Virus record (IMG/VR): IMGVR_UViG_3300028862_000012
Coordinates: 62,001 to 126,000 of that record
Length of the DNA stretch: 64,000 nt
Direction: 5' to 3' (one strand)
The notes under the pieces were generated by a model, which saw nothing but the letters and a program-made list of their open reading frames with translations, did no database searches and was not told the DNA's origin. Shown here piece by piece: positions 7,673-62,489 of the stretch (positions within the stretch are counted from its first letter, which is position 1; every line of letters begins with the position of its first letter). The translations under genes were made by a program, and so were the position numbers.

Positions 7673-8037
7673 TATTTACTCACAATATTTTTTATATAAA
7701 AAGAATCAAAATCTTTCTTATCAGGTAAATTTAATGTAGTACCTATATCTTCCTTTGATAAAGAAAGTCTATTATTAAGCCATAATGTTAATTCATCATA
7801 TAAAAAGAAGTCTTTATAAAGATCATAAATTAAAATATCTAATCGATATACATCTCCTTGTCGTAAGCGCTCTTCATATACTTTTTCTGTATAATCAAAT
7901 TCTTCTATTTTAAAAGTACAAATATCAGGATAAAAATTACCTTCAGAGTCTGCTTGATCTGAGTCTTGCATAAATAAATATCTACTTGATGTGCTATTAG
8001 GATTTGAATTATTAGACACTTGTAGTACTTCCTCCAT
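7672..8037 (-). CDS. gp53/LysM-like baseplate wedge protein
   Basis: YRLDILIYDLY...LWLNN...DIGTTLNLPD follows the LysM-like gp53/tail X pattern, and the position is canonical. Confidence 0.5.
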   Translation of the reverse strand: MEEVLQVSNNSNPNSTSSRYLFMQDSDQADSEGNFYPDICTFKIEEFDYTEKVYEERLRQGDVYRLDILIYDLYKDFFLYDELTLWLNNRLSLSKEDIGTTLNLPDKKDFDSFYIKNIVSK

Positions 8038-8692
8038 TAGGAATTTCAGTTAGATTATCTATCATTTGAGTATTAGCAATATCAATAGTCTGAAACTCTA
8101 ATCGTAAGGAACCTTGCACAGGATATCCGTTTGAATCTACTGCCATAGAATAAGTAGGCTCAGCACTTGTTATAATAACACTAGATAAATAAATAAAGTT
8201 TCCAATGCGTAAAGATAAATTGCCTTTACTGGTAAGATGACCCCATACTCCATTTATTATTCCAGACGTTTCACCAAGCTCTTGTTTAAGTGCATCACGT
8301 ATAGTAGGGCCGGGAGCTTGTAAGGTATAAGCATCTTTACTACGAGTAGGAACTACTAATTTTAATACTTCACTCATTGGTTTTATTACATCTTCTTTAC
8401 CTGAAGTTCTCATATAAAAAATAGATTCAGTAGAAAAAGATATTGGATCAGTTTTTTCCCATACTTGAAATCCTGCCACTGAAACTACACCTGATCCTAA
8501 TTTCTGTAAAAAATCAATATTGGATAAAGTACTTATTAATGGATTTGACTCTGAACGCATTAGCTGTCTAAAACTTGAAGATATTTTTAAAGATATTTCT
8601 TCTGTATTTATAATTGTAGCATTAGAAGGTACTAATGTACCTGCAAGTCGAAGTTCTATTATATTTCCGCGAGGAATTTTCATTATGCTCAT
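8012..8692 (-). CDS. Tail tube initiator-like baseplate protein
   Basis: Lies immediately after the tape measure gene. C-terminal LRIGNFIYLSSVIITS..PTY.....GYPVQGSLRLEF resembles tube-fold proteins. Confidence 0.45.
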   Translation of the reverse strand: MSIMKIPRGNIIELRLAGTLVPSNATIINTEEISLKISSSFRQLMRSESNPLISTLSNIDFLQKLGSGVVSVAGFQVWEKTDPISFSTESIFYMRTSGKEDVIKPMSEVLKLVVPTRSKDAYTLQAPGPTIRDALKQELGETSGIINGVWGHLTSKGNLSLRIGNFIYLSSVIITSAEPTYSMAVDSNGYPVQGSLRLEFQTIDIANTQMIDNLTEIPNGGSTTSV

Positions 8693-8694
8693 AC

Positions 8695-26528: not shown

Positions 26529-26543
26529 ACTAACTATTATAGT

Positions 26544-27956
26544 GTGCATAGCACATTTAATAACGCCATAGGCAAAGTAAAGGAAACAAGTATGGAAAAA
26601 GCAATGTCTCGAAAGGATCTGTTTAAAAAACTTAAAGCAGAAAAAGAAGAAGCAAACACCAATTTTCAGGGTTTTGAAAATCCTGAATATGTAGCACTAT
26701 CAGACGATGAATATCGTTTAATTAGGCTCATGGGAAATGAGTTGCAGTCAAAGGATCACTGTCCTACTGATGCACATTTATTCAAGACTATTTTTATTAA
26801 GGGTGATGATGGAAAGAAGATGAAAACTATTCTTAATCCAGACAGGGATCATCCATTTAATAAGATGGTATACTTTTTAGGTAAGGGTAAATGGATTGAT
26901 GATGAAAATACTGGAAAGAAAAAGAAAGTCTATGATCACGAGGGAAGCCCGTCTCTTGCTATCATGAATAGTAATTATCATGATGATGGCCCGTATCCTC
27001 AGTCATGGGACTCTCCGCAGAAGTATGTAGCTATTAATTGTATTGATCGTATGGATGATTGGTGTAAAACTAATAATCATACTAAGGTACTGATTCACAG
27101 TGTAAATGTTGATGGTGATAAAGTTTATCCTGAAATTGGAATTAAAAAGACCTTGTATGATATAATTTGGGAACAACTTTGTACCGAATATGAATTACAT
27201 TTTGAAGATTTTGATATTGCAGTAAAGCGTATTCCAACTTCAAAGGATAAGTCTAAAAAGCAGACTGTTTACTTTAAGGCTGTTCGTGCTGATCGTGCTG
27301 AAAAGGATTTGATTGAGTTTGGCAATAAGATTGGTGTTGACTATGCCTCTCGAATTGTAGCTGAAGGCGCTCCGACCGACGCTGAGTATGCATATGAACA
27401 GTATAACTTTGAAACAATGCCTTGCTTTCTGCCTACTTCTGCAAAACGTTTATATAATCACATTAAGAACTTTGTGAAGAAAGTTGATACAGAGTTTGGT
27501 TCCGATTATGTAGGCGATTTTACCGCTTATATTGAAAAAGAAGAAGCAGAGCGTAAGATTTTTTGGGCAGAGTATAAGAAAGCTCATGCAACAGAAGAAT
27601 CAGAAGATAAAGTAACTAAGCCAGCAAGCAAGGAAACTACTTCAAAAGAAACTACTGTTTCTAAGGAGTCTGTTCGCCGGTCTGTTGTGAAAAAGGAAGA
27701 GCCAAAGAAGGAAGAGCCAGCTTTTGATACTTCAGAGCTTGATCCTGAAATTTATACTGGTATTAGTAAAATGTCTGATGAAGATAAGGCACTGATTATT
27801 GGTGTAGATGAGGATTCAGGAGAGCTTAAATTCCGTGCTGACTGCCAGCTTGTAGAGTGTGCTAATAATAATGGCCCTGATGATGAAGAAGGCTGTCACT
27901 TTATGACTCCTTCTACTTATACTATTTGCCCATATTGTGCCGCCGAGTTTCAGTAA
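26544..27956 (+). CDS. Single-stranded DNA-binding protein, T4 gp32-like, with C-terminal zinc ribbon
   Basis: YRLIRLMG, YVAINCIDR and DFDIAVKR patterns. Acidic/Lys low-complexity linker and terminal CHF...CPYC. The start may be GTG 26544 or a later ATG. Confidence 0.65.
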   Translation: MHSTFNNAIGKVKETSMEKAMSRKDLFKKLKAEKEEANTNFQGFENPEYVALSDDEYRLIRLMGNELQSKDHCPTDAHLFKTIFIKGDDGKKMKTILNPDRDHPFNKMVYFLGKGKWIDDENTGKKKKVYDHEGSPSLAIMNSNYHDDGPYPQSWDSPQKYVAINCIDRMDDWCKTNNHTKVLIHSVNVDGDKVYPEIGIKKTLYDIIWEQLCTEYELHFEDFDIAVKRIPTSKDKSKKQTVYFKAVRADRAEKDLIEFGNKIGVDYASRIVAEGAPTDAEYAYEQYNFETMPCFLPTSAKRLYNHIKNFVKKVDTEFGSDYVGDFTAYIEKEEAERKIFWAEYKKAHATEESEDKVTKPASKETTSKETTVSKESVRRSVVKKEEPKKEEPAFDTSELDPEIYTGISKMSDEDKALIIGVDEDSGELKFRADCQLVECANNNGPDDEEGCHFMTPSTYTICPYCAAEFQ

Positions 27957-32012: not shown

Positions 32013-34214
32013 ATGATTAAAAAAGGACAAACATTAAAATTATCTTTAGCTACTTTATCAAGGCATAAAAAGCGATATGAGGTTTTAGGTTATAATATAA
32101 ATAAGATTAAGGAAGATAATCCTAATATCCCACTAAATGATATTTACTTAGATATTCCTGCTGAGTTCATACACTCTTCTGGATCTGATTTACCTTTATA
32201 TATGATTTGTGATTTTTGTAATCAGGAATATGAAACTACTTGGAGAAAATATACTAAACTACCGCAAGGGAAGGATGCATGTAATTCTTGTAAAGAATTA
32301 AAAAGAACAAATACTTGTATAGAAAAATATGGAGTAACTAATGTTTTTCAAGAGTTTTCTGTTAAAGAAAAAAGTAAAATAACTTGTTTAGAAAAATATG
32401 GTGTTGAACATGCTATTCAAAATAAAGAAATAATGAATAAAGCAGAAAATAATAAAAAAGTATCTAATAAGAAAAAATATGGTGTTGAGAGTGTATTTAG
32501 CTTATCTTCAGTACAACAAAAATCAAAAGAAACTAATTTAGAAAGATATGGATGTGAATATTCCTGTCAAAATAAAGATATAATAGCTAAAAGATGTCTT
32601 ACAGTAAAAGAAAAATATTCTGATCCTGTTGAGATTAAGAAGGTTTCAGACAAGTTAAAAAATACTATGATGAAAAGATATGGATATACTTCTGCTTTAA
32701 AAAATCCTGAAATATTAGCTAAGAAAACACAAACTATGTTTGATTTATATGGAGAAATAGGCTCTGAAGCAAGAAAAGAATTAGAAGAAAAACGAAAACA
32801 ATCGAATATAGAAAAATATGGTGTAGAGTATCTGCTTCAAAATAAAGAACTTGGAGAAAAAGCAAAGGTAAATAGAAAAGCTTATCTTATGAAAGAGTAT
32901 GGAGTAACTAATAATCTTATTATACCAGAAGTAAAAGAAAAAATAAAGCAAAAGAATATAGAAAAATATGGTGTAGACAGTCCTTTTAAGCTTCCTACTT
33001 TTCAAGAAAAGATTAGACAAATAAATATATTAAAATATGGCACTCCCTATCCTATGCAAAATTCAGAAGTGCGAAGAAAAGTATTTAAGCATAAAGGAAA
33101 GTCAGTACCTGAGTCTAAGTTTGAAGAGATGTTAAAAAATAGAGGCTTTATTTATAAATATGAACTTAATACAAATGGAAAATGCTTTGATTTTACTATT
33201 TATAATATAGATATGACAATAAATACAATTGTAGAAATTGATGGCGAATATAATCATGGACTAAAAAATGATTCAGATGGTTTTCATGTTCATGGAGAAA
33301 AAGATTGTGAACGATTTCAAAAAGTCCCAGATGGAGTTAAATATATAGTATGTAATTCCCTTAACATAGAAGAAGGTTTTTCACAGTTATGCTCAAACTT
33401 TGATGTCAATTATAGTGCTTGGATAAAAGAAATAATTGATGCATGTAATGTTGATTTTCCATATCCTGAATATTCTATTGAGCGTATGAAAAAAGAATAT
33501 AATAAATTAGCTGTTGCAGATTATAAACATAATTCATATGTAGGTCAGTCTATTATTAAGAATTTTCATAAATCAATTTATATTGCTCATGTATCTAATA
33601 AACCGTCCCCAGTTGAAGCTTGGAAGAATTCAGAGTTATTAAAAAAATGTATTGAAAATAGATTTATTTATGCAAACACACTAAGTTCTCAATCTATAGC
33701 TGATGGATTTAATGTTTGTAAAATAGCACCAAAAGTTTCTGTGTTTAGAGCTATTCTAGCGCGCGAGCTAATATTAAAATATTTAAATCAATATGACACA
33801 ATTTTTGATCCTTTTTCTGGATTTAGCGGTCGTATGTTAGGAACAACTTGTTTAAATAAAAAATATATTGGACAAGATATAAACAATACTTTTGTAAAAG
33901 AAAGTAATGAAATCATTAATTTTTTAAACTTAAATGCAAGTGTTTTAGAAAAAGATATTTTTGAAAGCTATGGAGAATATGACTGTTTATTTACTTGTTC
34001 TCCTTATAATTTAAAAGAAACATGGAATAACAGTAATCAAAAAAATCTAAGTTGCGATGAATGGATTGATATATGTTTATCTCATTTTAAATGTAAGTCA
34101 TATTTATTTGTAGTTGATGAAACTATTAAGTATAAAGATTACATTGTAGAGGAAATAAAAAATACAAGCCATTTTGGAAGAAATATAGAAAAAGTTATTC
34201 TTATAAGAAAATAA
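32013..34214 (+). CDS. Homing-endonuclease-like protein (Zn domain, EKYGV repeats, Vsr/DUF559-type PD-(D/E)xK nuclease) fused to a DNA amino-methyltransferase
   Basis: CDFC...CNSC, about 8 xxEKYGVx repeats, KSVPE...FDF...IVEIDGEYNHG nuclease, then IFDPFSGFSGRMLG (motif I) and LFTCSPY (motif IV variant). Confidence 0.75.
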   Translation: MIKKGQTLKLSLATLSRHKKRYEVLGYNINKIKEDNPNIPLNDIYLDIPAEFIHSSGSDLPLYMICDFCNQEYETTWRKYTKLPQGKDACNSCKELKRTNTCIEKYGVTNVFQEFSVKEKSKITCLEKYGVEHAIQNKEIMNKAENNKKVSNKKKYGVESVFSLSSVQQKSKETNLERYGCEYSCQNKDIIAKRCLTVKEKYSDPVEIKKVSDKLKNTMMKRYGYTSALKNPEILAKKTQTMFDLYGEIGSEARKELEEKRKQSNIEKYGVEYLLQNKELGEKAKVNRKAYLMKEYGVTNNLIIPEVKEKIKQKNIEKYGVDSPFKLPTFQEKIRQINILKYGTPYPMQNSEVRRKVFKHKGKSVPESKFEEMLKNRGFIYKYELNTNGKCFDFTIYNIDMTINTIVEIDGEYNHGLKNDSDGFHVHGEKDCERFQKVPDGVKYIVCNSLNIEEGFSQLCSNFDVNYSAWIKEIIDACNVDFPYPEYSIERMKKEYNKLAVADYKHNSYVGQSIIKNFHKSIYIAHVSNKPSPVEAWKNSELLKKCIENRFIYANTLSSQSIADGFNVCKIAPKVSVFRAILARELILKYLNQYDTIFDPFSGFSGRMLGTTCLNKKYIGQDINNTFVKESNEIINFLNLNASVLEKDIFESYGEYDCLFTCSPYNLKETWNNSNQKNLSCDEWIDICLSHFKCKSYLFVVDETIKYKDYIVEEIKNTSHFGRNIEKVILIRK

Positions 34215-38420: not shown

Positions 38421-40184
38421 ATGATAGATTACAATCAAGTTGTAAATGTTAGTTTACATTCAATTTTAAATAAAAGAGTTTATTATGAAAAACAAGGATT
38501 TAATGTAGACAACTTAAAACTCAAAGTAAATGAATTAACATGCAGAACTTATACAAATAAAGATTATTCTAATGTATCTATTGAAATGCCTTTATGTAAA
38601 GTATTTCCATCAGCAAGTTCACAAATTAAAGTAAAAGTAGTATGTGATTATTGCCACACTGAATATGAAACTATGTATATGATAGTATTATCTCGTTCTG
38701 GTAAAAATTGTTGTAAAAATTGTATTCACGCTAAGTCTGCTGAAAGCTTAAAGAAAGAATTTGGTGTAACAAATGTGTCTCAATTAGACTCTATAAAGTT
38801 AAAGAAAAAAGAATTAAGCTTACAGAAGTTTGGAACAATAACCCCATTACAAAATAAAGAGATTAAAGAAAAAATAGTTAAAACAAACATAGAAAAATAT
38901 GGTGTTAAATATGCATCTATGCTAAAAGAAAAAGTAGATTATACTAAAGAAGCATGGAAAAATAAAACAGAAGAGGAACTATCTGACATAAGGTATAGAC
39001 GAGACAAAACTTGGTTATTAAATAGAGGATTTTTAGAAGAGACTTTAGCTCAGGCTGAAAAAGATAAAGTTTCCTTTACTGAAATTAAAAGAAACTTTAA
39101 TAGAAAAGTTAGTTATTCTACTTTAAGTAATTTTGCTATATCTCAAAACTTTTCTATACTCACTTCATTTGAAGAGTTTAAATCTTTTATTTATGAAAAA
39201 GGTAAGACAATCAGATTTAAGTGTAATACTTGTGATACTGAATTTTTTCAGTATATGAATTATGGATTTGTATCAGATGATAGTAGAATTGAATGTCCTA
39301 AATGTCCTTCTGCTATTGGAAGTCGCGAAGAAAATGAAGTTCTTGATTATATTAAATCTATTTATTTTAATGAAATTATTCATAGCTATAAATTAATTAA
39401 TAGAAAAGAAATAGATATAGTTATTCCAGAATTCAATTTAGGAATAGAATATAATGGATCATATTGGCATAATGATAAGTTTCGCGGAAAATATTATCAT
39501 ATAGAAAAATACAATTCAGCTAAAGAAGAAAAAATAGACCTTATTTTTATTAATGATTTTGAATGGAAGTATAAGCAGGATATAGTTAAATCAATTATAA
39601 AGAATAGATTAAAGATAGTCGATAAACGACTATATGCTCGTAAGGGAATTATTAGCTTAGTTGATTCATCTACTGCTAAAGAATTTTTCTATGTTAATCA
39701 TATTCAGGGTAGTAAAAGTATAAACTCTAAAATGATTTCTATTGGATTATACATAGATTCTGAACTTGTTTCTTTAGTAAGTTTTAATAAAACAAAGTAT
39801 AGAAAAGATTATGAATATGATTTAGTACGTTATGCAAATAAATTAGGCTATCAAGTTATAGGCGGGTTTAGTAAAATACTTTCGTTTTTTGAAAAAGCTT
39901 ATAAACCATCAAGTATAGTAACCTTTTCTGAAATACGGTTGTTTAAGTCCTCTGTTTATGAAAAAGCAGGGTTTACTTTAGACCATATTACCAGACCAAA
40001 TTACTTTTATACAAAAAATAATATATTTGCTGGTTCTCGTCAAAACTTTCAAAAAAGTAAGTTAAAGAAATTATTTGATGATTATACTGACTCTAAAACA
40101 GAAAGTGAAATGATGGCAGAACATAATTACGATAAAATTTGGGATTGCGGAGTACGAGTTTTTGTAAAAAAGTATCAAAAGTAA
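38421..40184 (+). CDS. Hef-like homing endonuclease (Zn domain, repeats, PD-(D/E)xK nuclease, C-terminal GNAT-like domain)
   Basis: GSREENEV...EIDIVIPEFNLGIEYNGSYWH, NHIQG, IGGFSKIL..F and YEKAGF...PNY form the Hef-like pattern of T4-like phages. Confidence 0.75.
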   Translation: MIDYNQVVNVSLHSILNKRVYYEKQGFNVDNLKLKVNELTCRTYTNKDYSNVSIEMPLCKVFPSASSQIKVKVVCDYCHTEYETMYMIVLSRSGKNCCKNCIHAKSAESLKKEFGVTNVSQLDSIKLKKKELSLQKFGTITPLQNKEIKEKIVKTNIEKYGVKYASMLKEKVDYTKEAWKNKTEEELSDIRYRRDKTWLLNRGFLEETLAQAEKDKVSFTEIKRNFNRKVSYSTLSNFAISQNFSILTSFEEFKSFIYEKGKTIRFKCNTCDTEFFQYMNYGFVSDDSRIECPKCPSAIGSREENEVLDYIKSIYFNEIIHSYKLINRKEIDIVIPEFNLGIEYNGSYWHNDKFRGKYYHIEKYNSAKEEKIDLIFINDFEWKYKQDIVKSIIKNRLKIVDKRLYARKGIISLVDSSTAKEFFYVNHIQGSKSINSKMISIGLYIDSELVSLVSFNKTKYRKDYEYDLVRYANKLGYQVIGGFSKILSFFEKAYKPSSIVTFSEIRLFKSSVYEKAGFTLDHITRPNYFYTKNNIFAGSRQNFQKSKLKKLFDDYTDSKTESEMMAEHNYDKIWDCGVRVFVKKYQK

Positions 40185-44924: not shown

Positions 44925-45863
44925 ATGTCAAAGACTATTAACAAAGAAGTGTATACAGAAGCAGTGAAGATTTATCGTAAGGTTTATAAAAATAAGCCTT
45001 TGGATGAATCTGCTATTAAAAATATTATGGCTCGTATTGAGAGCAAACGTAATAAGAAACCCACAATGGATGAATCTATTGATAAGTTTCTTGAGGGGAA
45101 AAAGTTCTCTGCTCGTCAGTTCTTAAAAGAGTTTGAAGTGGCAGATGATTATGATCCGTCTAGTAATGGAGTGCCTGATTTTGCAGGTCAGAGTTCTAAT
45201 ACTCCTTTTGAAAATGCTCCCGAAGTTGGGAACGATGACTTTAAGGATGAACAGGCTATTCCTGAAACCAATCCTGATGTTGATACAGATATAAGTTCAC
45301 AGCTTATTGCAGAGCGAAAGAATAGAAAAAGTGAAGGATTTTATCGTAGAAATGAAGATGCAGAAACTAATGTAGATTCATTAATTAATGGTAATTATGT
45401 TACTCCTAATGAGTACGATTTTGTTGATGATTTTACCTATGATGAAGATATTGATAAAGCAATTGATGATCTAAATATTGTTGAAGGTGAGGAAGAAATT
45501 AGTTATGATACTCCCCTTACGTATAATGATTCTATTGATGCCCCTATTATCAATGAACCTATTTTTGATAATCCTATAGTTGATCCTATTATTGATGCTC
45601 CTTTTGTTGATCCGTATGCAGATTTAGATTATGAAGACTACATTATAACTGATGATTATCTTTTTGAGGATGCAGAAAAAGATGAGGATGAGGATGAGGA
45701 AGAAGGTAAGGGTGTAGTTGCTGAAGGTAAAAAGAAAACTGTAAAAGAAGATGATGAAGAAAAGAAAGATGATGAAAAAGATGCAGAAGATAAAGAAAAG
45801 AAAGATGCTAAAGACGACGATGAAAAAAAAGATGATAAGAAAGAAGAAAAGTGTAAAAAATAA
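44925..45863 (+). CDS. Highly acidic low-complexity protein, candidate prohead core protein
   Basis: 312 aa. LDES/MDES/FLKE motifs, (I/V)DxP repeats and a D/E/K-rich tail. Preceded by TAACTATTA, followed by a terminator. Confidence 0.6.
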   Translation: MSKTINKEVYTEAVKIYRKVYKNKPLDESAIKNIMARIESKRNKKPTMDESIDKFLEGKKFSARQFLKEFEVADDYDPSSNGVPDFAGQSSNTPFENAPEVGNDDFKDEQAIPETNPDVDTDISSQLIAERKNRKSEGFYRRNEDAETNVDSLINGNYVTPNEYDFVDDFTYDEDIDKAIDDLNIVEGEEEISYDTPLTYNDSIDAPIINEPIFDNPIVDPIIDAPFVDPYADLDYEDYIITDDYLFEDAEKDEDEDEEEGKGVVAEGKKKTVKEDDEEKKDDEKDAEDKEKKDAKDDDEKKDDKKEEKCKK

Positions 45864-45885
45864 TAATTAAAAATTTTTTTTATAT

Positions 45886-45912
45886 AAAGCCAGTAGCAAT
45901 ACTGGCTTTTTT
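45886..45912 (+). terminator. Intrinsic terminator
   Basis: AAAGCCAGTA-GCAA-TACTGGCTTTTTT. Confidence 0.85.
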
Positions 45913-45921
45913 AATTACTAA

Positions 45922-45950
45922 TTGACAAAGATTTATGTTTATGCTATTTT
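45922..45950 (+). promoter_or_regulatory. sigma70-type promoter
   Basis: TTGACA-N17-TATTTT with an extended TGn. Confidence 0.55.
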
Positions 45951-46523
45951 ATGATAAATAGGAATATAAAAATGGAAACACAGGAAATAGATGTAATTAA
46001 AAGTTATATGGAATTCATTGAACAAGCTTATGAAAAACGCCGCAAAAGTGTTAGTATATTAAATGAATTGGATCAAGTTACTCCAGAAAGGATAAACTTT
46101 TGTTTAGCCTCATTTACAGAAGTAAGTGATACCTTACTTTCTGAATATAGTAAGGAATTAGTCAGGTGCGAGGATTTTAAAAAAGAGTTTAATCACTGGA
46201 AAGATGAAAAGTTTTTACTTGCGCGGTCTAAGCTTCGAGCTGATATTGCAAAAAGTCAAGCACTATCTCAAAGGGAAATTGATGCACAGGCATATGTGGA
46301 CAATAAAGAAGAGTGGAAAAGGCAGGAAGATAAGCTTTTTTTCATGGAAGCAAAATGTGATTTATATAGACGATTACGAGAGAATTGGACTAATCAAAGT
46401 TTTATGCTAAAAGAAATTTCAGAAAATATGAAAGTAGAAATGCATACACTTAATGCAGATAGAATAGTAAATAAATCTGATGCTAAAGTTATAATACCAC
46501 TAAGAAGACAGTTAAAGAGCTGA
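45951..46523 (+). CDS. UvsY-like recombination mediator (tentative)
   Basis: All-helical. LSQREIDAQAYVDNKEEW...KCDLYRRLRENWTNQSFMLKEI resembles the UvsY-like helical pattern. Confidence 0.4.
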   Translation: MINRNIKMETQEIDVIKSYMEFIEQAYEKRRKSVSILNELDQVTPERINFCLASFTEVSDTLLSEYSKELVRCEDFKKEFNHWKDEKFLLARSKLRADIAKSQALSQREIDAQAYVDNKEEWKRQEDKLFFMEAKCDLYRRLRENWTNQSFMLKEISENMKVEMHTLNADRIVNKSDAKVIIPLRRQLKS

Positions 46524-46556
46524 TAATAGCCTTGCTAGTCTGATAACTATTAGTAT

Positions 46557-47126
46557 ATGGAAAGTTATCAGACTAGAATAAGCAGACATTTAAGACCATT
46601 AAAAAAACGTTTACATGATAATTATATGAATAGAATAGGGCTTGATCTAGAGTTATTTGCTTTATCTATTGAAAATAATAGTCATGATGATGAAGTAAAA
46701 ATTGATTTAACCAATACAAAAAAGATATTAGGATTTATAAAATATCCCGAAGATGAAATTCCTATTTCAAATAGTTATAACAATAACAATAATTCTATGA
46801 GTTTTCATATGTATGACATATTACCTATAGAGTTTTATTGTAAATGGGAAGATAAAATAAAAATAAGTGATATTATAATTCAAAAAATTATAATGCCTGA
46901 TGACAGTGTTAAAGCAATGATACTGCAAGTAGTTGATTTAATAGCTCGTGCAGATACCGATTTTATGTTTGCAAAATATATAGTAGCTCCTTATACTTTT
47001 AACTTAAAGAATACTTCACACATGGAAATAAAAAATGAAATAGAAAAGTACTTAAAAGAGCCAGTAATAGTAAATAGTACTATAGAGCTTACTGCAAATT
47101 TAACTCCTGAACCTGATGAATATTAA
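46557..47126 (+). CDS. Head closure / neck protein (gp14-like, tentative)
   Basis: TAACTATTA-N4-ATG. Beta-rich with a KIKISDIII...LQVVD...YIVAP pattern. Confidence 0.4.
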   Translation: MESYQTRISRHLRPLKKRLHDNYMNRIGLDLELFALSIENNSHDDEVKIDLTNTKKILGFIKYPEDEIPISNSYNNNNNSMSFHMYDILPIEFYCKWEDKIKISDIIIQKIIMPDDSVKAMILQVVDLIARADTDFMFAKYIVAPYTFNLKNTSHMEIKNEIEKYLKEPVIVNSTIELTANLTPEPDEY

Positions 47127-47437: not shown

Positions 47438-47901
47438 ATTATATTCCTGAACAGGTAATATTAGGATTATTAGAAGTACCTAATGAAATTAGTTTGATTA
47501 TTCCTATTACTGGATGTAGTCTGCATTGTAATGGTTGTCATAGTCCTGAAATGCAAAATGAAAAAAATGGTGAAGAGCTTACTGAAGAAAAATTTATATC
47601 CTTATTATTTAATTATAAAAATAAAGCCTCTTGTATATGCTTTTTTAGTGGTGAGTTTAAAATATCTCATTTAATTACTAGAGCAAAGAATGAAGGATTT
47701 AAAACCGCTCTTTATTCAGGATTTACTAATATAAAGGATATTCCTTTTAATATATTACAAAATATAGATTATTTAAAATTAGGTGAATATAATGAATTAA
47801 AGGGTGGTCTTCAAGAAAAGACTACCAATCAAAGAATATACAAAATAGACAATGGCAACTATGAAGATATAACACAATTATTTTGGAGAAATAAATTATG
47901 A
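47434..47901 (+). CDS. nrdG: Anaerobic ribonucleotide reductase activating protein (radical SAM)
   Basis: GCSLHCNGCHS (CxxxCxxC), DYLKLGEY and TNQRIY. Adjacent to nrdD. Confidence 0.92.
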   Translation: MNYIPEQVILGLLEVPNEISLIIPITGCSLHCNGCHSPEMQNEKNGEELTEEKFISLLFNYKNKASCICFFSGEFKISHLITRAKNEGFKTALYSGFTNIKDIPFNILQNIDYLKLGEYNELKGGLQEKTTNQRIYKIDNGNYEDITQLFWRNKL

Positions 47902-50126
47902 TTAAATTATCACAAAAAGACTTAAAAGAAAAGAATGACTATGCAAAGAATTATATGAGTAACGGTAACGCCGCTTCTAAATCTGAAGTAGATCCTAATG
48001 CTAATGTAAGTACAAAAAGTGTTGCAACATTAGATAATGAAATGTTTAAGGATATTAAAGTTCAAGTTAATAGATATGCTTTAGGAGAAAAGATAGCAGA
48101 ATTATTTGGAGAAGAAACAAAAGCAGAGTATTATCGACAATTAGAGTCTCATGAAATTTATAGTCATGATGAATCAGCTACTTATTGTAAACCTTATTGC
48201 GTGGCAATAGATCTTTATCCCTTTATTAATAATGGTAATAAGATGATAGGTGGCTCAAGCAAAGCTCCAACTAATTTACAATCCTTTTGTGGTAGCTATG
48301 TTAATTTAATATTTTTAATTGCTTCACAATTTGCTGGTGCTGTGGCTGATGTTTCTTTTTTGACTTATTTTGATTATTTTGCTAGAAAAGATTTTGGAGA
48401 TGATTATTTAAAAACTCATACTAAGCAGATAGAGCGGTACTTTAAGCAGGTAATATATACCTTAAATGATCCTTCAGTTGGAAGGGGTAATCAAGCTGTA
48501 TTTTATAATACCTCAATTTTTGATGAAAATTATTTTAAAGGATTATTTTCAAATGTAATTTTTCCTGATTTTACTAATCCAAAATGGGAAACAGTAAAAG
48601 AGTTACAAGTATTTTTTATGCATTGGTTTAATAAAGAGCGAAACAGAGCTTTACTTACTTTTCCAGTTATGACTTTTGCGTACCAGACAGAAGCAGGTGA
48701 GTCAAAAGATTTAGAGTTTAAGAACTTTATGGCACAGGAAATGTCGGAAGGTAATAGTTTCTTTATTTATCATTCTGATGATATTGACAGTTTAAGTTCT
48801 TGCTGTTTTGATAAGAGTCAAGAAATCATGTTCAGAATTTCTGAAAATTCTGAAACTATTGAAATGAACTTTCAGGATGCCTATGAAAAGTATACTGATT
48901 CTATTTATATTTATTTTAATAATTATTGGAAAAAGGCTAAAGTAGTAAAAATCGATAGAAATAATAAAAAAATGTTTATGATAACTACTGAAGCTGAAAA
49001 AAAGATTATAGTTACCGAAGATCATTTAAATCCTACAGAGTTTGGAGATGTAGAAACAAAATTTTTGATGTTAAGTGATAAACTAAAAACAGATTCAGGA
49101 TATGAAGAAATTGTTTTAATAAAAGAGATTAATAATTACAAAGAAGATTACGTGTATTGTCTTGAAATGGAGGACAAAGAGAATCCTTACTTTACACTTC
49201 CTAATGGGATAATTACTCATAATTGTCGTTTACGCAATGCTATTGAAAAAGATGTATTTGCTTATACTTTAGGTGGTACTGGAATTTCTACAGGTTCAAA
49301 AAAAGTATTTACTTTAAATATAAATCGTATGGTTCAAGATAATCATAATGTAGTAGAAGAAGTTAAAAAATTACATAAATATCTTTTTGCCTATGATGCT
49401 ATTCTTCGAGAGATGCAAGCTAAAGGAATGTTACCTGTTTATGATGCTGGTTTTATTTCGTTAGACAAACAATATTTAACTATTGGAATTAATGGAGTAG
49501 TAGAAGCGGCTGAATTTTTGGGATATGAAATATCTAATAATAAAGAGTATAAAGATTGGCTTATTGGATTATTAAGTTCTATTAAAGATGCTAATAAACA
49601 AGCATCTGATGAGCTTTCTTTCTATTCTAATTATAAAATAGCAATAAATTCTGAATTTGTGCCAGCAGAAAATTTGGGAGCAAAGAATGCTCAATGGGAT
49701 AAAAAAGCAGGATATGTTGTACCTAGAGATTGCTATAATTCTTACCTTTATATTGTTGAGGATGATGCACTCGATTTCGTTGATAAGTTTTATCTACATG
49801 GAAAAGAAGTAACTCAATTTCTTGATGGTGGCAGTGCCTATCATATGAATATTAAGGAAATTCCTACAAAAGAAACTTGGTTAAAAATTATTGATATTGG
49901 AAATAAGTCTGGTTGTAATTATTGGACTTATAATTGTTTAACTACCTGTTGTGAAAATCCTGAATGTGGTTATATTGATAAAAATACAACACATAAATGT
50001 GCAAAGTGTGGATCAGAGGATATATCTTGGGCAACAAGAGTTATTGGATATTTAAAAAAAATTAAAAGTTTTAGTGAAGCTAGACAGGCAGAAGCAAGTC
50101 TTAGATATTTACATAAATTAAATTGA
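47898..50126 (+). CDS. nrdD: Class III (anaerobic) ribonucleotide reductase containing an intein
   Basis: IYSHDE, SSC|CRL active-site loop, EFVPAENLG, zinc CENPECG...CAKCG and glycyl-radical TRVIGY. Confidence 0.93.
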   Translation: MIKLSQKDLKEKNDYAKNYMSNGNAASKSEVDPNANVSTKSVATLDNEMFKDIKVQVNRYALGEKIAELFGEETKAEYYRQLESHEIYSHDESATYCKPYCVAIDLYPFINNGNKMIGGSSKAPTNLQSFCGSYVNLIFLIASQFAGAVADVSFLTYFDYFARKDFGDDYLKTHTKQIERYFKQVIYTLNDPSVGRGNQAVFYNTSIFDENYFKGLFSNVIFPDFTNPKWETVKELQVFFMHWFNKERNRALLTFPVMTFAYQTEAGESKDLEFKNFMAQEMSEGNSFFIYHSDDIDSLSSCCFDKSQEIMFRISENSETIEMNFQDAYEKYTDSIYIYFNNYWKKAKVVKIDRNNKKMFMITTEAEKKIIVTEDHLNPTEFGDVETKFLMLSDKLKTDSGYEEIVLIKEINNYKEDYVYCLEMEDKENPYFTLPNGIITHNCRLRNAIEKDVFAYTLGGTGISTGSKKVFTLNINRMVQDNHNVVEEVKKLHKYLFAYDAILREMQAKGMLPVYDAGFISLDKQYLTIGINGVVEAAEFLGYEISNNKEYKDWLIGLLSSIKDANKQASDELSFYSNYKIAINSEFVPAENLGAKNAQWDKKAGYVVPRDCYNSYLYIVEDDALDFVDKFYLHGKEVTQFLDGGSAYHMNIKEIPTKETWLKIIDIGNKSGCNYWTYNCLTTCCENPECGYIDKNTTHKCAKCGSEDISWATRVIGYLKKIKSFSEARQAEASLRYLHKLN
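48804..49223 (+). mobile_element. 140-aa mini-intein in NrdD
   Basis: Begins CFD (C1), block B VTEDH, block F DYVYCLEM, ends THN followed by Cys+1. Too short for a homing endonuclease. Confidence 0.92.
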
Positions 50127-59191: not shown

Positions 59192-59439
59192 GTACAGATT
59201 TTTGTTGTCCTGATTGTAAATGGTGGCCTCCTGATAGTTATTACTATATTAAAGAAAAGCAAGTTATTGAATGTAGTAACAATATAAAACATAATGTATA
59301 TCCAAAGTATTTAGAAATTTATACTGATTGGAAAAATCGTAGATGTTATCGGAAAGTATTTAAATGTGGAAAATGTTTTAAAGAGTTTGAACAAAGTATA
59401 GTAGAGGAAAACATTATTGTAGAGGAAAAAGATGATTAA
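59188..59439 (+). CDS. Small Cys-rich protein
   Basis: CPDC...C...CGKC. Overlaps the helicase stop (ATGA). Confidence 0.55.
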   Translation: MSTDFCCPDCKWWPPDSYYYIKEKQVIECSNNIKHNVYPKYLEIYTDWKNRRCYRKVFKCGKCFKEFEQSIVEENIIVEEKDD

Positions 59440-60199
59440 AAATAATAGTATACACGAAGGTGATTGTTTAGATATATTGCCATTAATTGAAGATAAATCT
59501 ATAGATATGGTTTTGGCAGATTTGCCTTTTGAGACAACTCAGAACTTTTGGGATGTATTAATTGATTTACCTAAACTTTGGATTCAGTATGAACGAGTAA
59601 TAAAAGATAACGGAGCTATACTTTTATTTGCTCAAACACCTTTTGATAAAATACTTGGATGTAGTAACTTAAAATTATTAAAATATGAATGGATATGGGA
59701 AAAAAGCAAAGCTACTGGATTTTTAAATGCTAAAAAGTTTCCATTAAAAGCCCATGAGAATATTTTAGTGTTCTATAAGCATCCTCATATTTATAACCCT
59801 CAAATGACTAAAGGTACACCTTATAATAAAGGATTAATTAAAGCACAAAATGGGAACGGTAGCTATTCAAACTATAATGAAAAGGTAGGGAAGAATGATA
59901 CAGGAGATAGATTACCTCGCGATGTTATTTATTTTAAGACAGCAGAAACAGAGGGTAAACAGACTCATAGTACTCAAAAGCCTGTAGCTTTATTAGAGTA
60001 TTTTATAAAGACTTATACTAACGAAAACATGCTAGTATTAGATAATTGCGCCGGAAGTTTTAGTACAGGGGTAGCTTGTTGTAATACAAATAGAAATTAT
60101 ATCTTGATTGAAAAAGATCATGATATTTTTTGTAAAGGGAAAGCTCGATTAGAAAAAGTGTTGGAAGATAAGCAAAATAGCTTATTAACTATTTTATAA
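59432..60199 (+). CDS. DNA N6-A/N4-C methyltransferase (beta class)
   Basis: GDCLD, ADLPF (DPPY-like), HSTQKPVALLEYFIKTYT and VLDNCAGSFSTG. Confidence 0.9.
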   Translation: MIKNNSIHEGDCLDILPLIEDKSIDMVLADLPFETTQNFWDVLIDLPKLWIQYERVIKDNGAILLFAQTPFDKILGCSNLKLLKYEWIWEKSKATGFLNAKKFPLKAHENILVFYKHPHIYNPQMTKGTPYNKGLIKAQNGNGSYSNYNEKVGKNDTGDRLPRDVIYFKTAETEGKQTHSTQKPVALLEYFIKTYTNENMLVLDNCAGSFSTGVACCNTNRNYILIEKDHDIFCKGKARLEKVLEDKQNSLLTIL

Positions 60200-60209
60200 G
60201 GAAAAAATA

Positions 60210-60908
60210 ATGTGTTATATGGGTGGAAAAAATAGAATTAGAAAACAAATATCAGTGTTTCTTGAAAGCGTAAGAAAACCAGAACAAACATATTTTGAGC
60301 CGTTTGTTGGCGGTGCGTGGGTTTTGCAGGAAATGAGTGGGAAGCGTATTGCAAGTGATGGAAATAATGCGTTAATAACTATGTATAAGGCTTTACAATC
60401 AGGATGGATACCTCCTGATGAAATAACTTTAGAACAATATAACTATTATAAAAAAATAAAAAATGAACAAGATCCTATGACTGCTTTTGTTGGTTTTGGA
60501 TGTAGTCATAGTGGAAAATGGTTTAATGGATTTGCACATAGTAATACTAGAAATTATTGTTATAATGCAAAAAATAGTTTATTGAAACAATTAGAATATA
60601 TTAAAGATGTAGAGTTTATATACGGAGATTTTAAAGATCATGAACCAAGGGACTGTTTAATTTATTGTGATCCGCCTTACAAAGATACTACAAGCTATGG
60701 TTATTTTAAATCATTTAATTATGAATTATATTATGAGACTATTAAATTATGGAGCTATAATAATACTGTAATTGTTTCTGAATATAATATGCCAGAAGAT
60801 TTTGAGTGTGTTTTAGAAATAAATACTAAAACAGACATGAGAACAAAAAACTTAGTAGAACAATCTAGAGTTGAAAAATTATTTAGATATAAAAGAGGTA
60901 TTAAATGA
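60210..60908 (+). CDS. Dam/D12-class N6-adenine methyltransferase (alpha class)
   Basis: YMGGK, YFEPFVGG and IYCDPPY. Confidence 0.9.
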   Translation: MCYMGGKNRIRKQISVFLESVRKPEQTYFEPFVGGAWVLQEMSGKRIASDGNNALITMYKALQSGWIPPDEITLEQYNYYKKIKNEQDPMTAFVGFGCSHSGKWFNGFAHSNTRNYCYNAKNSLLKQLEYIKDVEFIYGDFKDHEPRDCLIYCDPPYKDTTSYGYFKSFNYELYYETIKLWSYNNTVIVSEYNMPEDFECVLEINTKTDMRTKNLVEQSRVEKLFRYKRGIK

Positions 60909-61252
60909 GTTTTACAGTAAATGGAATTGGTGCAATTATTATATTAGTTGCCTTAGGTATAGATATTTGCTATAATATCTATAAGTTTATTAATTGGATA
61001 ATTACGCAAAGTAAGTCATTGAATGATGATCCTTTATTTAGAGCTAATGTAGACTATGTTAATAAAATACGTGACTATATAAAGCATGAAGATGCTATCA
61101 TTGATATAGTGAGTTTTACTACTCAAGCTATTCCTTTATATGAAAAAGATTATCCAGAGTTAGTACAAGATAATTTAAGAATGCAAAGAATAAAAGAAAA
61201 CTTATATACACTTTCTGAAATAATAATGAGGGATAATACTGTATGCTTATAG
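60905..61252 (+). CDS. Membrane-anchored hypothetical protein
   Basis: N-terminal hydrophobic helix. Confidence 0.55.
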   Translation: MSFTVNGIGAIIILVALGIDICYNIYKFINWIITQSKSLNDDPLFRANVDYVNKIRDYIKHEDAIIDIVSFTTQAIPLYEKDYPELVQDNLRMQRIKENLYTLSEIIMRDNTVCL

Positions 61253-61548
61253 AAATAAAAGACTTTTGGTATGTAGAGACTTCTACTGTAGACGGAATTC
61301 GATTAGATGTTCGTGGATGGTGGCGTAATAAATATCCGGTAATTATTATAGAACGATTCAAAGCAAAGAATATTATTCTATCTGATTTTGATAATAGTGA
61401 AGCACTTCAAAAAGAGTTTGAGCGATTAGTAAAGCTGTTTAATGAATGGGAAGTGTTTTTAAATAAGCATCATGATATAAATAAAACAATTAGACAGGTA
61501 AATAAAGTTACTACTAAGCAAGTTAGTAATAAGGAAAGTAAAATATAA
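61243..61548 (+). CDS. Hypothetical protein
   Basis: 101-aa ORF ending before the convergent terminator. Confidence 0.55.
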   Translation: MLIEIKDFWYVETSTVDGIRLDVRGWWRNKYPVIIIERFKAKNIILSDFDNSEALQKEFERLVKLFNEWEVFLNKHHDINKTIRQVNKVTTKQVSNKESKI

Positions 61549-61549
61549 A

Positions 61550-61587
61550 AGTAGCTACTGAAACATTTAAACTTTTCAGTAGCTACT
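61550..61587. terminator. Hairpin between convergent genes (bidirectional terminator-like)
   Basis: AGTAGCTACTGAAA-loop-TTTCAGTAGCTACT, 14-bp stem. Confidence 0.7.
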
Positions 61588-61593
61588 AATTAA

Positions 61594-61956
61594 TTACTGA
61601 ATATCTACAGTAACTTCAGCTTTCTTTTCTTCTTCACTCAGGGGTACAAACAGAGTAAGTATACCTGCATCAAGCTTAGTAGTAAGCTTTGTAATATCAT
61701 ACTTTTCACTGATGGAACCTTTACGAGTAACATCCTTAATTGAAACAGTAATAATATTCTTTTTATACGTTACTTTAATGTCTTCTTTCTTCTTGCGCGG
61801 AACCTCAAATTCAATAGTAAGTCCCTCAGTATCTTCCTTAATTGTCATAGGATACTTTTCTTTAGTTTCAAAATGGGTAATTTCATAATTACCAAGCGAA
61901 TCAACTAAATAAGAAAAAAGGTCATCAAAATCAGAAACTCCAGTAAATCTGTTCAT
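61594..61956 (-). CDS. Small heat-shock protein (Hsp20/alpha-crystallin)
   Basis: YPMTIKE...IEFEVP.KKKEDIKVT...ITVS...ITKLTTKLDAGILTLFVP...VTVDIQ. Start set at ATG 61956 after a GGAG SD. Confidence 0.85.
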   Translation of the reverse strand: MNRFTGVSDFDDLFSYLVDSLGNYEITHFETKEKYPMTIKEDTEGLTIEFEVPRKKKEDIKVTYKKNIITVSIKDVTRKGSISEKYDITKLTTKLDAGILTLFVPLSEEEKKAEVTVDIQ

Positions 61957-62010
61957 ACATAGCTCCAAAAAATATTAAATTATGTCTACATACATAGACA
62001 CTAATATACA

Positions 62011-62027
62011 AGCAATAATCGTGCCAA
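62011..62027 (-). promoter_or_regulatory. sigma54 (-24/-12) promoter upstream of hsp20
   Basis: Minus strand reads TTGGCACG-ATTA-TTGCT, an exact match to TGGCACG-N4-TTGCW, about 55 nt upstream of the start. Confidence 0.8.
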
Positions 62028-62196
62028 CTTTACAATAGTATAATTATATTAAAATATGTATATATAATAGAAGAAACTTGACAAAAAGTATAGTATTTCA
62101 TGTGCTTTTTATTAGATAAAAATTTATATACTATATTTTGACACACTATGACTAAAAGATGCGTTATTTTGACACATCTATTTTATACTATTTATG

Positions 62197-62225
62197 TTGA
62201 CAACAGAGTAAATCAGTGATAAAGT
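62197..62225 (+). promoter_or_regulatory. sigma70-type promoter (leaderless geometry)
   Basis: TTGACA-N17-TAAAGT with TGn. ATG 62232 follows after a 6-nt gap. Confidence 0.65.
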
Positions 62226-62231
62226 TTAGTA

Positions 62232-62489
62232 ATGACTATTTTAATTACTACTTTTACTATTCGGAAAAAAGTATACGAAGTATATACAGGTGACTATATC
62301 CTGTTTAATGGTGCTTGTTATCAATTCTGTACAGGCAATAAACGAGCGTTAGGTTTTGAAGGATATCATAGTTACTATTCTATACCTTTAACAGCAAAAG
62401 TATTAAAATCTATTGACTTAAACTTATTACAGAAAGTTGAAATAGGACATAAAGAAGATAGATCATTACTTACTTATTATTATTTTTAG
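62232..62489 (+). CDS. Hypothetical protein
   Basis: 85-aa ORF. Confidence 0.6.
   Translation: MTILITTFTIRKKVYEVYTGDYILFNGACYQFCTGNKRALGFEGYHSYYSIPLTAKVLKSIDLNLLQKVEIGHKEDRSLLTYYYF

What the first reader, a model, noticed from the sequence alone, without database searches (positions are those of the whole stretch)
61594..62027. Phage Hsp20 driven by a perfect sigma54 promoter
Seen: TTGGCACG-ATTA-TTGCT about 55 nt upstream of the only minus-strand gene in the right-hand 49 kb. Known: sigma54 promoters need a host enhancer-binding ATPase, and some bacterial small heat-shock genes are sigma54-dependent. Inference: the gene was captured with its host promoter and ties phage chaperone expression to a host stress circuit. 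It also implies the host has RpoN. Together with SD usage and spanin-like genes, this points to a Gram-negative, anaerobic-capable, probably non-Bacteroidota host.
Basis: partly seen in the sequence, partly recalled or inferred. Interest (0 to 1): 0.6.

Follow-up and report, generated by a model that had tools for sequence, protein, structure and literature searches.

The report
Phage chaperone gene with sigma-54 promoter
A 224-kb phage from peat carries a small heat-shock chaperone gene whose only recognisable promoter is a perfect, conserved sigma-54 promoter built like those of spirochaete hsp20 genes, so the phage appears to plug its chaperone into the host's enhancer-dependent stress switch.

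Summary
TTGGCACGATTATTGCT lies at 62027-62011 on the minus strand. It is 56 nt upstream of the true ATG (61956) of a 120-aa small heat-shock protein, the only minus-strand gene between 14.8 and 64 kb. It is the only exact TGGCAC-N5-TTGCW in the 224-kb phage genome (0.05 expected).

It is very probably a working sigma-54 promoter:
- The -24 and -12 blocks are invariant in two diverged syntenic relatives, while the spacer and flanks change.
- Four further unrelated groups of viral contigs place the same box directly before an sHSP gene.
- Neither of the phage's two own promoter classes occurs upstream on that strand.

The architecture matches bacterial hsp20 promoters of Spirochaetota, and of one Fibrobacter. 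Shared features are the AAAG prefix, GTGT nine nt after TTGCT, repeated upstream TGTGTCAAAA boxes and a stem-loop at the transcript's 5' end. A sigma-54-type box precedes hsp20 in 17/30 Spirochaetota, 4/30 Bacteroidota and 0/15 Bacillota loci.

The phage encodes neither RpoN nor an activator ATPase, so it must borrow both from the host. A recent capture of gene plus promoter is not supported, because the protein has no close bacterial relative. The host is unidentified; a spirochaete is the best guess. No RNA data exist.

The parts
62165..62176 (-). Upstream box copy 1. It reads TGTGTCAAAATA in the hsp20 direction, about -165 to -176 from the predicted start. Candidate enhancer (UAS) half-site.
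   Evidence: It is one of two identical 12-mers 31 nt apart. The 12-mer occurs 3 times in 224 kb against 0.12 expected. TGTGTCA/TGACACA is present upstream of 8/15 bacterial and 6/10 phage hsp20-linked sigma-54 promoters, against 8/124 and 22/223 other motif sites.
62134..62145 (-). Upstream box copy 2 (TGTGTCAAAATA), about -134 to -145 from the predicted start.
   Evidence: On the plus strand it reads TATTTTGACACA; no usable -10 follows this copy.
62011..62031 (-). Sigma-54 promoter core AAAG-TTGGCACG-ATTA-TTGCT, with -24 GG at 62025-62024 and -12 GC at 62013-62012.
   Evidence: Sequence. It is unique in the genome. The blocks are invariant in L002-L004 and L006 while the spacer differs. An identical 17-mer occurs in a spirochaete genome (L369).
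61998..62001 (-). Predicted start-site tetranucleotide GTGT, exactly 9 nt after TTGCT.
   Evidence: GTGT at this spacing is found in 7/13 bacterial hsp20-linked promoters, 9/107 other bacterial sites and 0/223 other viral sites. The stretch TTGTATATTAGTGTC matches L385's TTGTATATAAGTGAC at 13/15 positions.
61982..62001 (-). Stem-loop at the 5' end of the transcript, built on the palindrome GTCTATGTATGTAGAC.
   Evidence: Free energy is -8.1 kcal/mol. The z-score is -3.7 for the first 32 nt, and the feature is shared by bacterial hsp20 transcripts (mean z -1.84 against -0.10 for other sigma-54 sites). It is kept in L002 with a G-U pair.
61963..61966 (-). Shine-Dalgarno GGAG, 6 nt before the ATG.
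   Evidence: Sequence. It is unpaired in the predicted fold.
61594..61956 (-). hsp20 coding sequence (120 aa plus stop): disordered N-terminus, alpha-crystallin domain at about residues 37-106, C-terminal V-D-I.
61545..61587 (.). Intrinsic terminator hairpin with a U-tract, lying between hsp20 and the convergent plus-strand gene 61243-61548.
   Evidence: Free energy -19.2 kcal/mol, z -4.9, 0 of 200 shuffles as stable.
62169..62225 (+). Two sigma-70-like promoters for the divergent gene 62232-62489. They are neighbours, not part of the hsp20 unit, and the first overlaps box copy 1.
   Evidence: TTGACA-18-TATGTT and TTGACA-17-TAAAGT, each 10/12.

Best explanation
The phage hsp20 is a self-contained, one-gene transcription unit read by host RNA polymerase carrying sigma-54. 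The unit runs: upstream TGTGTCAAAATA boxes, a -24/-12 promoter, a GTGT start region, a 5' stem-loop, a free Shine-Dalgarno sequence, the coding sequence and a strong terminator.

Sigma-54 holoenzyme cannot open DNA without help, and the phage encodes no activator. Expression must therefore wait for a host enhancer-binding ATPase in its active state. That makes the chaperone a stress-gated gene, kept apart from the phage's own sigma-70-type and phage-specific promoter programmes.

The unit copies the design of Spirochaetota hsp20 promoters. The most likely host is therefore a spirochaete-like, Shine-Dalgarno-using, anaerobic diderm. The most likely activator is its NtrC/Rrp2-type response regulator.

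Shown here: the motif, its uniqueness, its conservation, its recurrence, the lack of other promoters, the sHSP fold and the shared architecture.
Inferred: that it fires, which activator acts on it, the role of the boxes, the host, and the chaperone's role as a holdase for phage or host proteins during infection.
For: Motif and conservation
- The match is exact and unique: one in 224 kb against 0.047 expected.
- It has the right orientation and sits 56 nt before the ATG.
- TTGGCAC and TTGCT are invariant while 3-4 of 5 spacer bases and the flanks differ, both in a relative with 70% aa identity (L002-L004) and in a syntenic relative with about 31-41% identity (L006).

Recurrence
- The same box lies directly before sHSP ORFs in four further groups of IMG/VR contigs: L021/L183/L171/L161, L043, L193 and L169. 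Their GC ranges from 28 to 50%.

No alternative promoter
- No sigma-70-like site lies on that strand.
- The best score for the phage-specific promoter class is 2.8, against 12 or more for real sites.

Dependence on the host
- No RpoN DNA-binding domain and no sigma-54 activator domain is found in the 91%-complete genome.

The motif hits are real sigma-54 promoters
- Of 95 ORFs behind the extended motif in bacterial genomes, HSP20 is the commonest family (13). Classical sigma-54 targets follow: GlnA, PTS EIIA-Man, P-II and flagellin.
- 11 of those 13 are Spirochaetota, 1 is Fibrobacter and 1 is an unnamed bacterium.

Taxonomic bias
- A sigma-54-type box lies upstream of hsp20 in 17/30 Spirochaetota loci, 4/30 Bacteroidota and 0/15 Bacillota.

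Shared extras
- GTGT at N9, TGTGTCA boxes and a 5' hairpin.

Host machinery in the comparison genomes
- All 10 bacterial genomes tested have rpoN.
- One Treponema genome has a single strong activator, REC-AAA+-HTH_8, encoded next to a PAS histidine kinase.
- T. denticola Hsp20 is among the most strongly heat-induced genes listed in that study, at 9.5- to 9.8-fold (PMC2965109).
Against: - There is no transcript evidence. The only public run holding the sequence is a DNA run kept as contigs.
- The host is unknown.
  - Phage GC (29%) is below most Treponema.
  - LigA is only 41% identical to one spirochaete genome and 26-32% to nine other genomes: seven more spirochaetes, a Clostridium and a Campylobacter.
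  - NrdD and the GmhA-like protein found nothing in five genomes.
- The boxes are direct repeats, and on the other strand they read as -35-like TTGACA. One overlaps a plausible promoter of the divergent gene.
- The hexamer enrichment (p = 1.1e-3) would not survive correction for all hexamers.
- L002 has TATCA/GATCA in place of TGTCA.
- L169 and L043 lack the exact box.
Confidence: 0.78

Rival explanations
1. The box binds sigma-54 holoenzyme but is not the hsp20 promoter. It might act as a stable closed-complex roadblock, insulator or sigma-54 sink in the divergent control region, while hsp20 is read from an unrecognised phage promoter.
For: Sigma-54 holoenzyme sits on DNA in an inactive state, and many non-promoter binding sites are known in E. 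coli (PMC4591121, listed). No activator gene is on the phage. A weak look-alike of the phage-specific promoter, TATACTATTGTAAAG, abuts the -24 block.
Against: Orientation and distance to the start codon are kept in seven phage variants and about 30 bacterial hsp20 loci. The look-alike scores 0.4 or less against 12 or more for true sites. In several contigs there is no divergent gene to insulate (L043, L021 group, L169).
Confidence: 0.08
2. The promoter works as proposed, but the host is not a spirochaete. It belongs to another phylum in which heat-shock genes are sigma-54 dependent, such as Bacteroidota, Planctomycetota, Fibrobacterota or an uncultured low-GC lineage.
For: A regulon survey finds sigma-54 promoters before groEL, ibpA-type sHSP, grpE and dnaK enriched in Bacteroidota and Planctomycetota (PMC12316311). 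One Fibrobacter and one unnamed bacterium show the same promoter. A few Bacteroidota hsp20 loci have a box (4/30). The host tests were inconclusive.
Against: Strong Shine-Dalgarno use and TTGACA-N17-TATAAT early promoters argue against Bacteroidota. Planctomycetota are GC-rich. The start-region match (13/15 to L385) and the TGTGTCAAAA boxes were seen only in Spirochaetota loci. The best bacterial sHSP hit in my samples is a 30%-GC spirochaete (L396).
Confidence: 0.3
3. It is a recently captured host cassette, gene plus promoter taken together.
For: The whole architecture, from boxes to 5' hairpin, resembles bacterial hsp20 units. A spirochaete locus has the identical 17-nt core (L369).
Against: No bacterial sHSP is closer than about 35% identity among 1.84 billion representatives. 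The word search finds only three family members. The unit's GC equals the phage's. The module is already present in relatives whose sHSP is only about 31-41% identical. L369's downstream gene is not an sHSP.
Confidence: 0.07
4. It is a chance match with no function.
For: The genome is AT-rich and the intergenic region holds many promoter-like strings. With one mismatch allowed, the window holds 2 matches against 0.75 expected.
Against: The exact match has an expectation of 0.013 per window. The blocks are conserved while the spacer is free. It recurs before sHSP genes in unrelated contigs.
Confidence: 0.02

Closest known systems
Spirochaetota hsp20 promoters (found here; for example, loci L385, L275, L319, L365 and L404; T. 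denticola Hsp20 TDE1029 is a known strongly heat-induced gene, PMC2965109)
   Same: TTGGCA(C/T)-N-TTGC(T/A) 40-110 nt before hsp20; an AAAG prefix; (T)ATAT(T/A)AGTG at the start site; TGTGTCAAAA/TTTTGACACA boxes 60-200 nt upstream; a 5' stem-loop; a free Shine-Dalgarno sequence.
   Different: The phage protein is only distantly related to these sHSPs (best 37.7 bits). The phage boxes are direct rather than inverted repeats. The unit sits in a 29%-GC phage genome. In the papers I searched, sigma-54 control of spirochaete hsp20 is not described.
E. coli ibpB sigma-54 promoter
   Same: An sHSP gene read from a sigma-54 promoter (stated in bioRxiv 10.1101/2022.10.13.511849).
   Different: ibpB also lies in the sigma-32 ibpAB operon and is a chromosomal gene. 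I made no sequence comparison of the promoters.
Borrelia Hk2-Rrp2-RpoN-RpoS cascade
   Same: A spirochaete sigma-54 system driven by a REC-AAA+-HTH response regulator encoded next to a PAS histidine kinase (PMC3037356, PMC2940757, PMC7649798). The same gene pair is the only strong activator in Treponema genome G001. The same motif precedes sigma-70-family factor genes in other Spirochaetota.
   Different: The known target there is rpoS, not hsp20. A link between this regulator and hsp20 or the boxes is my inference.
hsp20 of T4-like cyanophages
   Same: A phage-borne small heat-shock gene in large myoviruses (PMC1079782, PMC3037559). This phage's sheath is distantly T4-like.
   Different: Cyanobacteria lack sigma-54: Synechococcus did not ring in the RpoN control. 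Those genes therefore cannot use this promoter type. There was no detectable tblastn match to any INPHARED phage.
Phage-shock (PspF/sigma-54) response
   Same: A host sigma-54 activator that switches on under phage-inflicted stress (general knowledge).
   Different: In that system the promoter and the genes are the host's. Here the sigma-54 promoter sits on the phage.

Membership tests
Small heat-shock protein (Hsp20/alpha-crystallin) | Alpha-crystallin domain, a seven- or eight-stranded beta-sandwich | tested here: met
   Pfam HSP20 E 3e-7, covering residues 39-73 only. A PDB profile matches sHSPs over residues 36-119. The model has pLDDT above 90 for about residues 40-110 and seven strands. 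Foldseek gives 35 PDB matches at E <= 0.001, and every listed row is a small heat-shock or alpha-crystallin protein.
Small heat-shock protein (Hsp20/alpha-crystallin) | Conserved G-x-L near the end of the domain and a C-terminal I/V-x-I/V anchoring motif | tested here: met
   G98 is invariant, and L100 and P105 nearly so, in 30 sequences. The C-terminus reads V-D-I; relatives read V-E-I, F-E-I and I-E-I.
Small heat-shock protein (Hsp20/alpha-crystallin) | Oligomeric, ATP-independent holdase activity | not testable with these tools
   This needs purified protein and aggregation assays.
Sigma-54 (RpoN)-dependent promoter | GG and GC doublets exactly 10 nt apart within TGGCAC-N5-TTGCW | tested here: met
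   Exact match at 62026-62011. It also fits the longer published consensus mrNrYTGGCACG-N4-TTGCWNNw, which I recall from Barrios et al. 1999 and did not check against the paper.
Sigma-54 (RpoN)-dependent promoter | Lies upstream of a gene in the right orientation and is kept by selection | tested here: met
   56 nt before the ATG. The blocks are invariant and the spacer free in L002-L004 and L006. The box recurs before sHSP genes in four other contig groups.
Sigma-54 (RpoN)-dependent promoter | Transcription starts about 12 nt after the GC and needs RpoN | not testable with these tools
   No RNA run holds the sequence, and the host is unknown.
Sigma-54 (RpoN)-dependent promoter | An upstream activator sequence bound by an enhancer-binding ATPase | tested here: inconclusive
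   There are two identical TGTGTCAAAATA boxes at about -140 and -170. The box is enriched upstream of hsp20-linked promoters: 8/15 and 6/10 against 8/124 and 22/223. No binding data exist. The boxes can also be read as -35 elements of the divergent gene. No activator is encoded on the phage.
RNA thermometer (ROSE/fourU type) in an sHSP leader | Shine-Dalgarno sequence or start codon sequestered in a temperature-labile helix | tested here: not met
   The Shine-Dalgarno sequence and the AUG are unpaired in the predicted folds of the window and L002. In L006 the predicted fold (-3.9 kcal/mol, no better than shuffles) pairs two bases of the Shine-Dalgarno sequence. Whole-leader z-scores are -0.24, -0.27 and +0.67.
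The phage's own promoter classes (sigma-70-like TTGACA-N17-TATAAT; phage-specific TAACTATTA) | A match to either consensus upstream of hsp20 on its own strand | tested here: not met
   No minus-strand sigma-70-like site lies between 61969 and 62231. The best score for the phage-specific matrix is 2.8, rank 557, against 12 or more for 58 true-looking sites.

The most novel reading that the evidence does not exclude
Phage small heat-shock genes are repeatedly wired to the host's sigma-54 enhancer-dependent stress regulon. They reproduce the whole hsp20 control region of Spirochaetota: enhancer boxes, -24/-12 promoter, start site and 5' hairpin.

If this is right, three things follow:
1. Spirochaetes, which lack RpoH, would run their hsp20, grpE and stress-sigma genes through sigma-54 and an Rrp2-like activator. 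The papers I searched do not describe such a regulon.
2. This 224-kb T4-like phage and several other contigs would be among the first large phages assignable to Spirochaetota, recognisable by promoter mimicry.
3. A sigma-54 promoter would give a lytic phage an expression channel that escapes its own take-over of sigma-70.
Probability: 0.35. Interest if true: 0.75.

Novelty: new variant of a known kind. Interest (0 to 1): 0.62.

Why it matters
Phage gene expression is normally explained by host sigma-70, by phage-made sigma factors or by phage polymerases. I found no report of a sigma-54 promoter carried on a phage genome in my literature searches. Such a promoter would make one phage gene conditional on a host signalling ATPase, so that it reads out host stress.

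The same module turns up in at least five unrelated groups of viral contigs. It mirrors a hsp20 control region that is common in Spirochaetota, where neither this regulon nor large phages are well described.

It offers three practical things:
- a testable handle on how these bacteria sense proteotoxic stress;
- a sequence-based clue for assigning hosts to uncultured phages;
- a natural example of an orthogonal promoter channel on a phage.

Tried and rejected
RNA evidence
- The only public run holding the region is a peat DNA run kept as contigs.

Relatives among isolated phages
- None was found by DNA or by protein.

More relatives
- The neighbouring gene and a five-sequence alignment found only the same phage in IMG/VR.

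Second sigma-54 promoter in the phage
- None. The looser matches lie in coding sequence.

RNA thermometer
- Rejected.

Phage promoter look-alike next to the -24 block
- Rejected by matrix score.

Host identification
- LigA gives 41% identity to one spirochaete genome (G238) and 26-32% to nine other genomes.
- NrdD and the GmhA-like protein found nothing in five genomes.
- Sheath and NrdD point only to distant T4-like and assorted phages.
- Result: inconclusive.

Failed or wasted calls
- Wrong coordinates for L193 and a locus given where a genome handle was needed were plain slips.

Not attempted
- A complete census of viral sHSP genes.
- Complex prediction.

Full report
WHAT IS THERE

The window is bases 62001-126000 of a 223,865-bp IMG/VR virus record, 91% complete and 29% GC. 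The only public run that holds it is a peat metagenome.

On the minus strand, one search shows AAAG-TTGGCACG-ATTA-TTGCT at 62031-62011. GGAG follows at 61966-61963 and an in-frame ATG at 61956. The listed TTG at 61968 is probably not the start. The 120-aa product ends at 61594. A hairpin follows at 61587-61550 (-19.2 kcal/mol, z -4.9) with a U-tract. This makes a compact one-gene unit set convergently against the plus-strand gene 61243-61548.

In my ORF map it is the only minus-strand ORF between 14834 and 64000.

THE PROTEIN

- Pfam HSP20 matches at E 3e-7.
- An exhaustive HMMER search returns 106 hits at E <= 0.001. Almost all are of sHSP size (about 88-290 aa), and those I looked at further carry HSP20 domains. 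None is close: the best non-self hit is E 2.6e-8 at 35% identity.
- A profile hits solved sHSP structures.
- An AlphaFold model has a confident seven-strand sandwich. Foldseek gives 35 PDB matches at E <= 0.001, and every listed row is a small heat-shock or alpha-crystallin protein.
- G-x-L and a C-terminal V-x-I are present.
- The close family has three members only.
- The few relatives whose surroundings I fetched look phage-like or are uninformative.

IS THE MOTIF MORE THAN CHANCE?

Base composition predicts 0.013 exact TGGCAC-N5-TTGCW per window and 0.047 per genome. There is exactly one in the whole genome. The looser matches elsewhere lie inside genes.

IS IT UNDER SELECTION?

- A relative whose sHSP is 70% identical (L002-L004, three Logan assemblies) has TTGGCAC-ACTTC-TTGCT.
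- A syntenic relative at about 31-41% identity (L006) has TTGGCAC-GAAAC-TTGCT, 51 nt before its ATG.
- The two blocks never change, while the spacer and flanks do.

In seven further contigs an sHSP ORF follows directly. They fall into four groups: L021/L183/L171/L161, L043, L193 and L169, with GC from 28 to 50%.

ARE THERE OTHER PROMOTERS?

The phage has two abundant promoter classes:
- sigma-70-like TTTAGTAATTGACAT-N17-TATAAT;
- a phage-specific T-AACTATTA-[TG]A, found 12-66 nt before about 40 ORFs.

Neither occurs upstream of hsp20 on its strand. The genome has no RpoN DNA-binding domain and no sigma-54 activator domain. The leader is not a thermometer, since the Shine-Dalgarno sequence is free.

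THE BACTERIAL COUNTERPART

A scan of one genome per species for AAAGTTGGCAC-N5-TTGCT was cut at 120 rows. Among the 95 downstream ORFs, HSP20 was the commonest family (13). It came ahead of the textbook sigma-54 targets GlnA, PTS EIIA-Man, P-II and flagellin.

Of the 13 hsp20 loci, eleven are Treponema, Spirochaetales or Spirochaetia, one is Fibrobacter and one is unnamed.

In even samples of hsp20 loci, a sigma-54-type box lies within 420 nt upstream in:
- 17/30 Spirochaetota, including genomes of 23-32% GC;
- 4/30 Bacteroidota;
- 0/15 Bacillota.

In Spirochaetota the same motif also precedes grpE and sigma-70-family factor genes.

These bacterial promoters share four further features with the window:
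- GTGT nine nt after TTGCT: 7/13 against 9/107 other bacterial and 0/223 other viral sites. L385's TTGTATATAAGTGAC matches the window's TTGTATATTAGTGTC at 13/15 positions.
- TGTGTCA/TGACACA boxes upstream: 8/15 and 6/10 against 8/124 and 22/223. This was also the top hexamer in an unbiased scan, though at an uncorrected p of 1.1e-3.
- A 5' stem-loop: mean z -1.84 against -0.10.
- The AAAG prefix.

The window carries two identical copies of the box, 31 nt apart, at about -140 and -170. The 12-mer occurs 3 times in the genome against 0.12 expected.

All ten bacterial genomes I tested have rpoN. Treponema genome G001 has one strong activator, a REC-AAA+-HTH_8 protein encoded beside a PAS histidine kinase. 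G004 has the same pair. This is the Hk2/Rrp2 arrangement known from Borrelia.

T. denticola Hsp20 is among the most strongly heat-induced genes listed in that study. Leptospira interrogans lacks RpoH. None of the papers I searched links sigma-54 to spirochaete hsp20, or places a sigma-54 promoter on a phage. A 2025 survey reports sigma-54 chaperone promoters mainly in Bacteroidota and Planctomycetota.

HOW IT MOST LIKELY WORKS

Host sigma-54 holoenzyme sits on the box as a closed complex. A host activator, switched on by stress, then opens it. My best guess for that activator is an Rrp2-like response regulator acting from the TGTGTCAAAA boxes.

The transcript starts at about 62000 with a protective hairpin and is translated from a free Shine-Dalgarno sequence. 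The chaperone is thus made only when the infected cell signals stress, independently of the phage's sigma-70-type and phage-specific programmes.

The motif, its conservation, its recurrence, the absence of rival promoters and the shared design are shown here. Firing, the activator, the role of the boxes, the host and the benefit to the phage are inferred.

THE HOST

The promoter design points to Spirochaetota.

The direct tests were inconclusive, so I put a spirochaete host at about one half.

'Captured with its host promoter' is not supported as a recent event, because the protein is far from every bacterial sHSP. An old capture, or mimicry maintained by selection, fits better.

LIMITS

- There are no RNA data.
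- The statistics on the boxes rest on small and partly related sets.

Noticed in passing
window 26532, 28014, 29772, 30053, 34232, 40409, 44884, 50205, 52035 and about 30 more sites genome-wide: A phage-specific promoter-like motif, T-AACTATTA-[TG]A, lies 12-66 nt before about 40 ORF starts. It is probably the middle or late promoter of this distantly T4-like phage. The factor that reads it was not sought.
   Followed up: partly
window 15504, 31979, 38371, 45922, 55104, 62197 and elsewhere: About 30 intergenic sigma-70-type promoters share the extended form TTTAGTAATTGACAT-N17-TATAAT. This implies a host with a canonical sigma-70.
   Followed up: partly
G000 24860-27262 (L010:4860-7262, minus strand; outside the window): An 800-aa ORF has a C-terminal match to the PHROG for the PurZ-type adenylosuccinate synthetase (E 2e-46). 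This raises the possibility that the phage DNA carries 2-aminoadenine.
   Followed up: no
window 47898-50126: The anaerobic ribonucleotide reductase NrdD matches its relatives in two or three pieces and gives a weak intein-splicing hit. It may hold an intein or an insertion.
   Followed up: no
G000 7327-8991 and 45125-46729 (outside the window): Large homing/HNH endonuclease ORFs lie beside the DNA polymerase and in the replication module.
   Followed up: no
G000 about 28.7-34.3 kb (L010:8682-14269): A cluster of ten tRNA genes lies here. One ARAGORN call has a four-base anticodon (aatt).
   Followed up: no
L006:544-546: The sHSP gene of this distant relative has an in-frame TAG where relatives have Ala or Tyr. 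The gene caller read it as Gln. It is either stop-codon recoding or a nonsense change.
   Followed up: no
P0003: A 2931-aa protein in the representative library matches the phage sHSP in about 20 separate stretches. It looks like a giant tandem array of alpha-crystallin domains.
   Followed up: no
L110:6269-6673, L119:1307-1711, L168:268-672, L182:1278-1682, L212:11310-11714: Five viral contigs carry a 135-aa ORF family with no Pfam match at a fixed 22 nt behind the same sigma-54 motif. This may be a second recurrent phage target of sigma-54.
   Followed up: partly
L358, L364, L367, L368 (Spirochaetota genomes): The same extended sigma-54 motif precedes grpE and three sigma-70-family factor genes. 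This hints that the spirochaete stress regulon as a whole runs through sigma-54.
   Followed up: partly
window 32013-34214 and 38421-40184: Two large ORFs carry DUF7487. One is fused to an N6/N4 DNA methylase domain. Two further methylase genes lie at 59432-60908, just before the hsp20 unit.
   Followed up: no
G000 202758 (minus strand; outside the window): The third genomic copy of the 12-mer TATTTTGACACA overlaps the TTG start of an ORF. It is probably a coincidence.
   Followed up: yes
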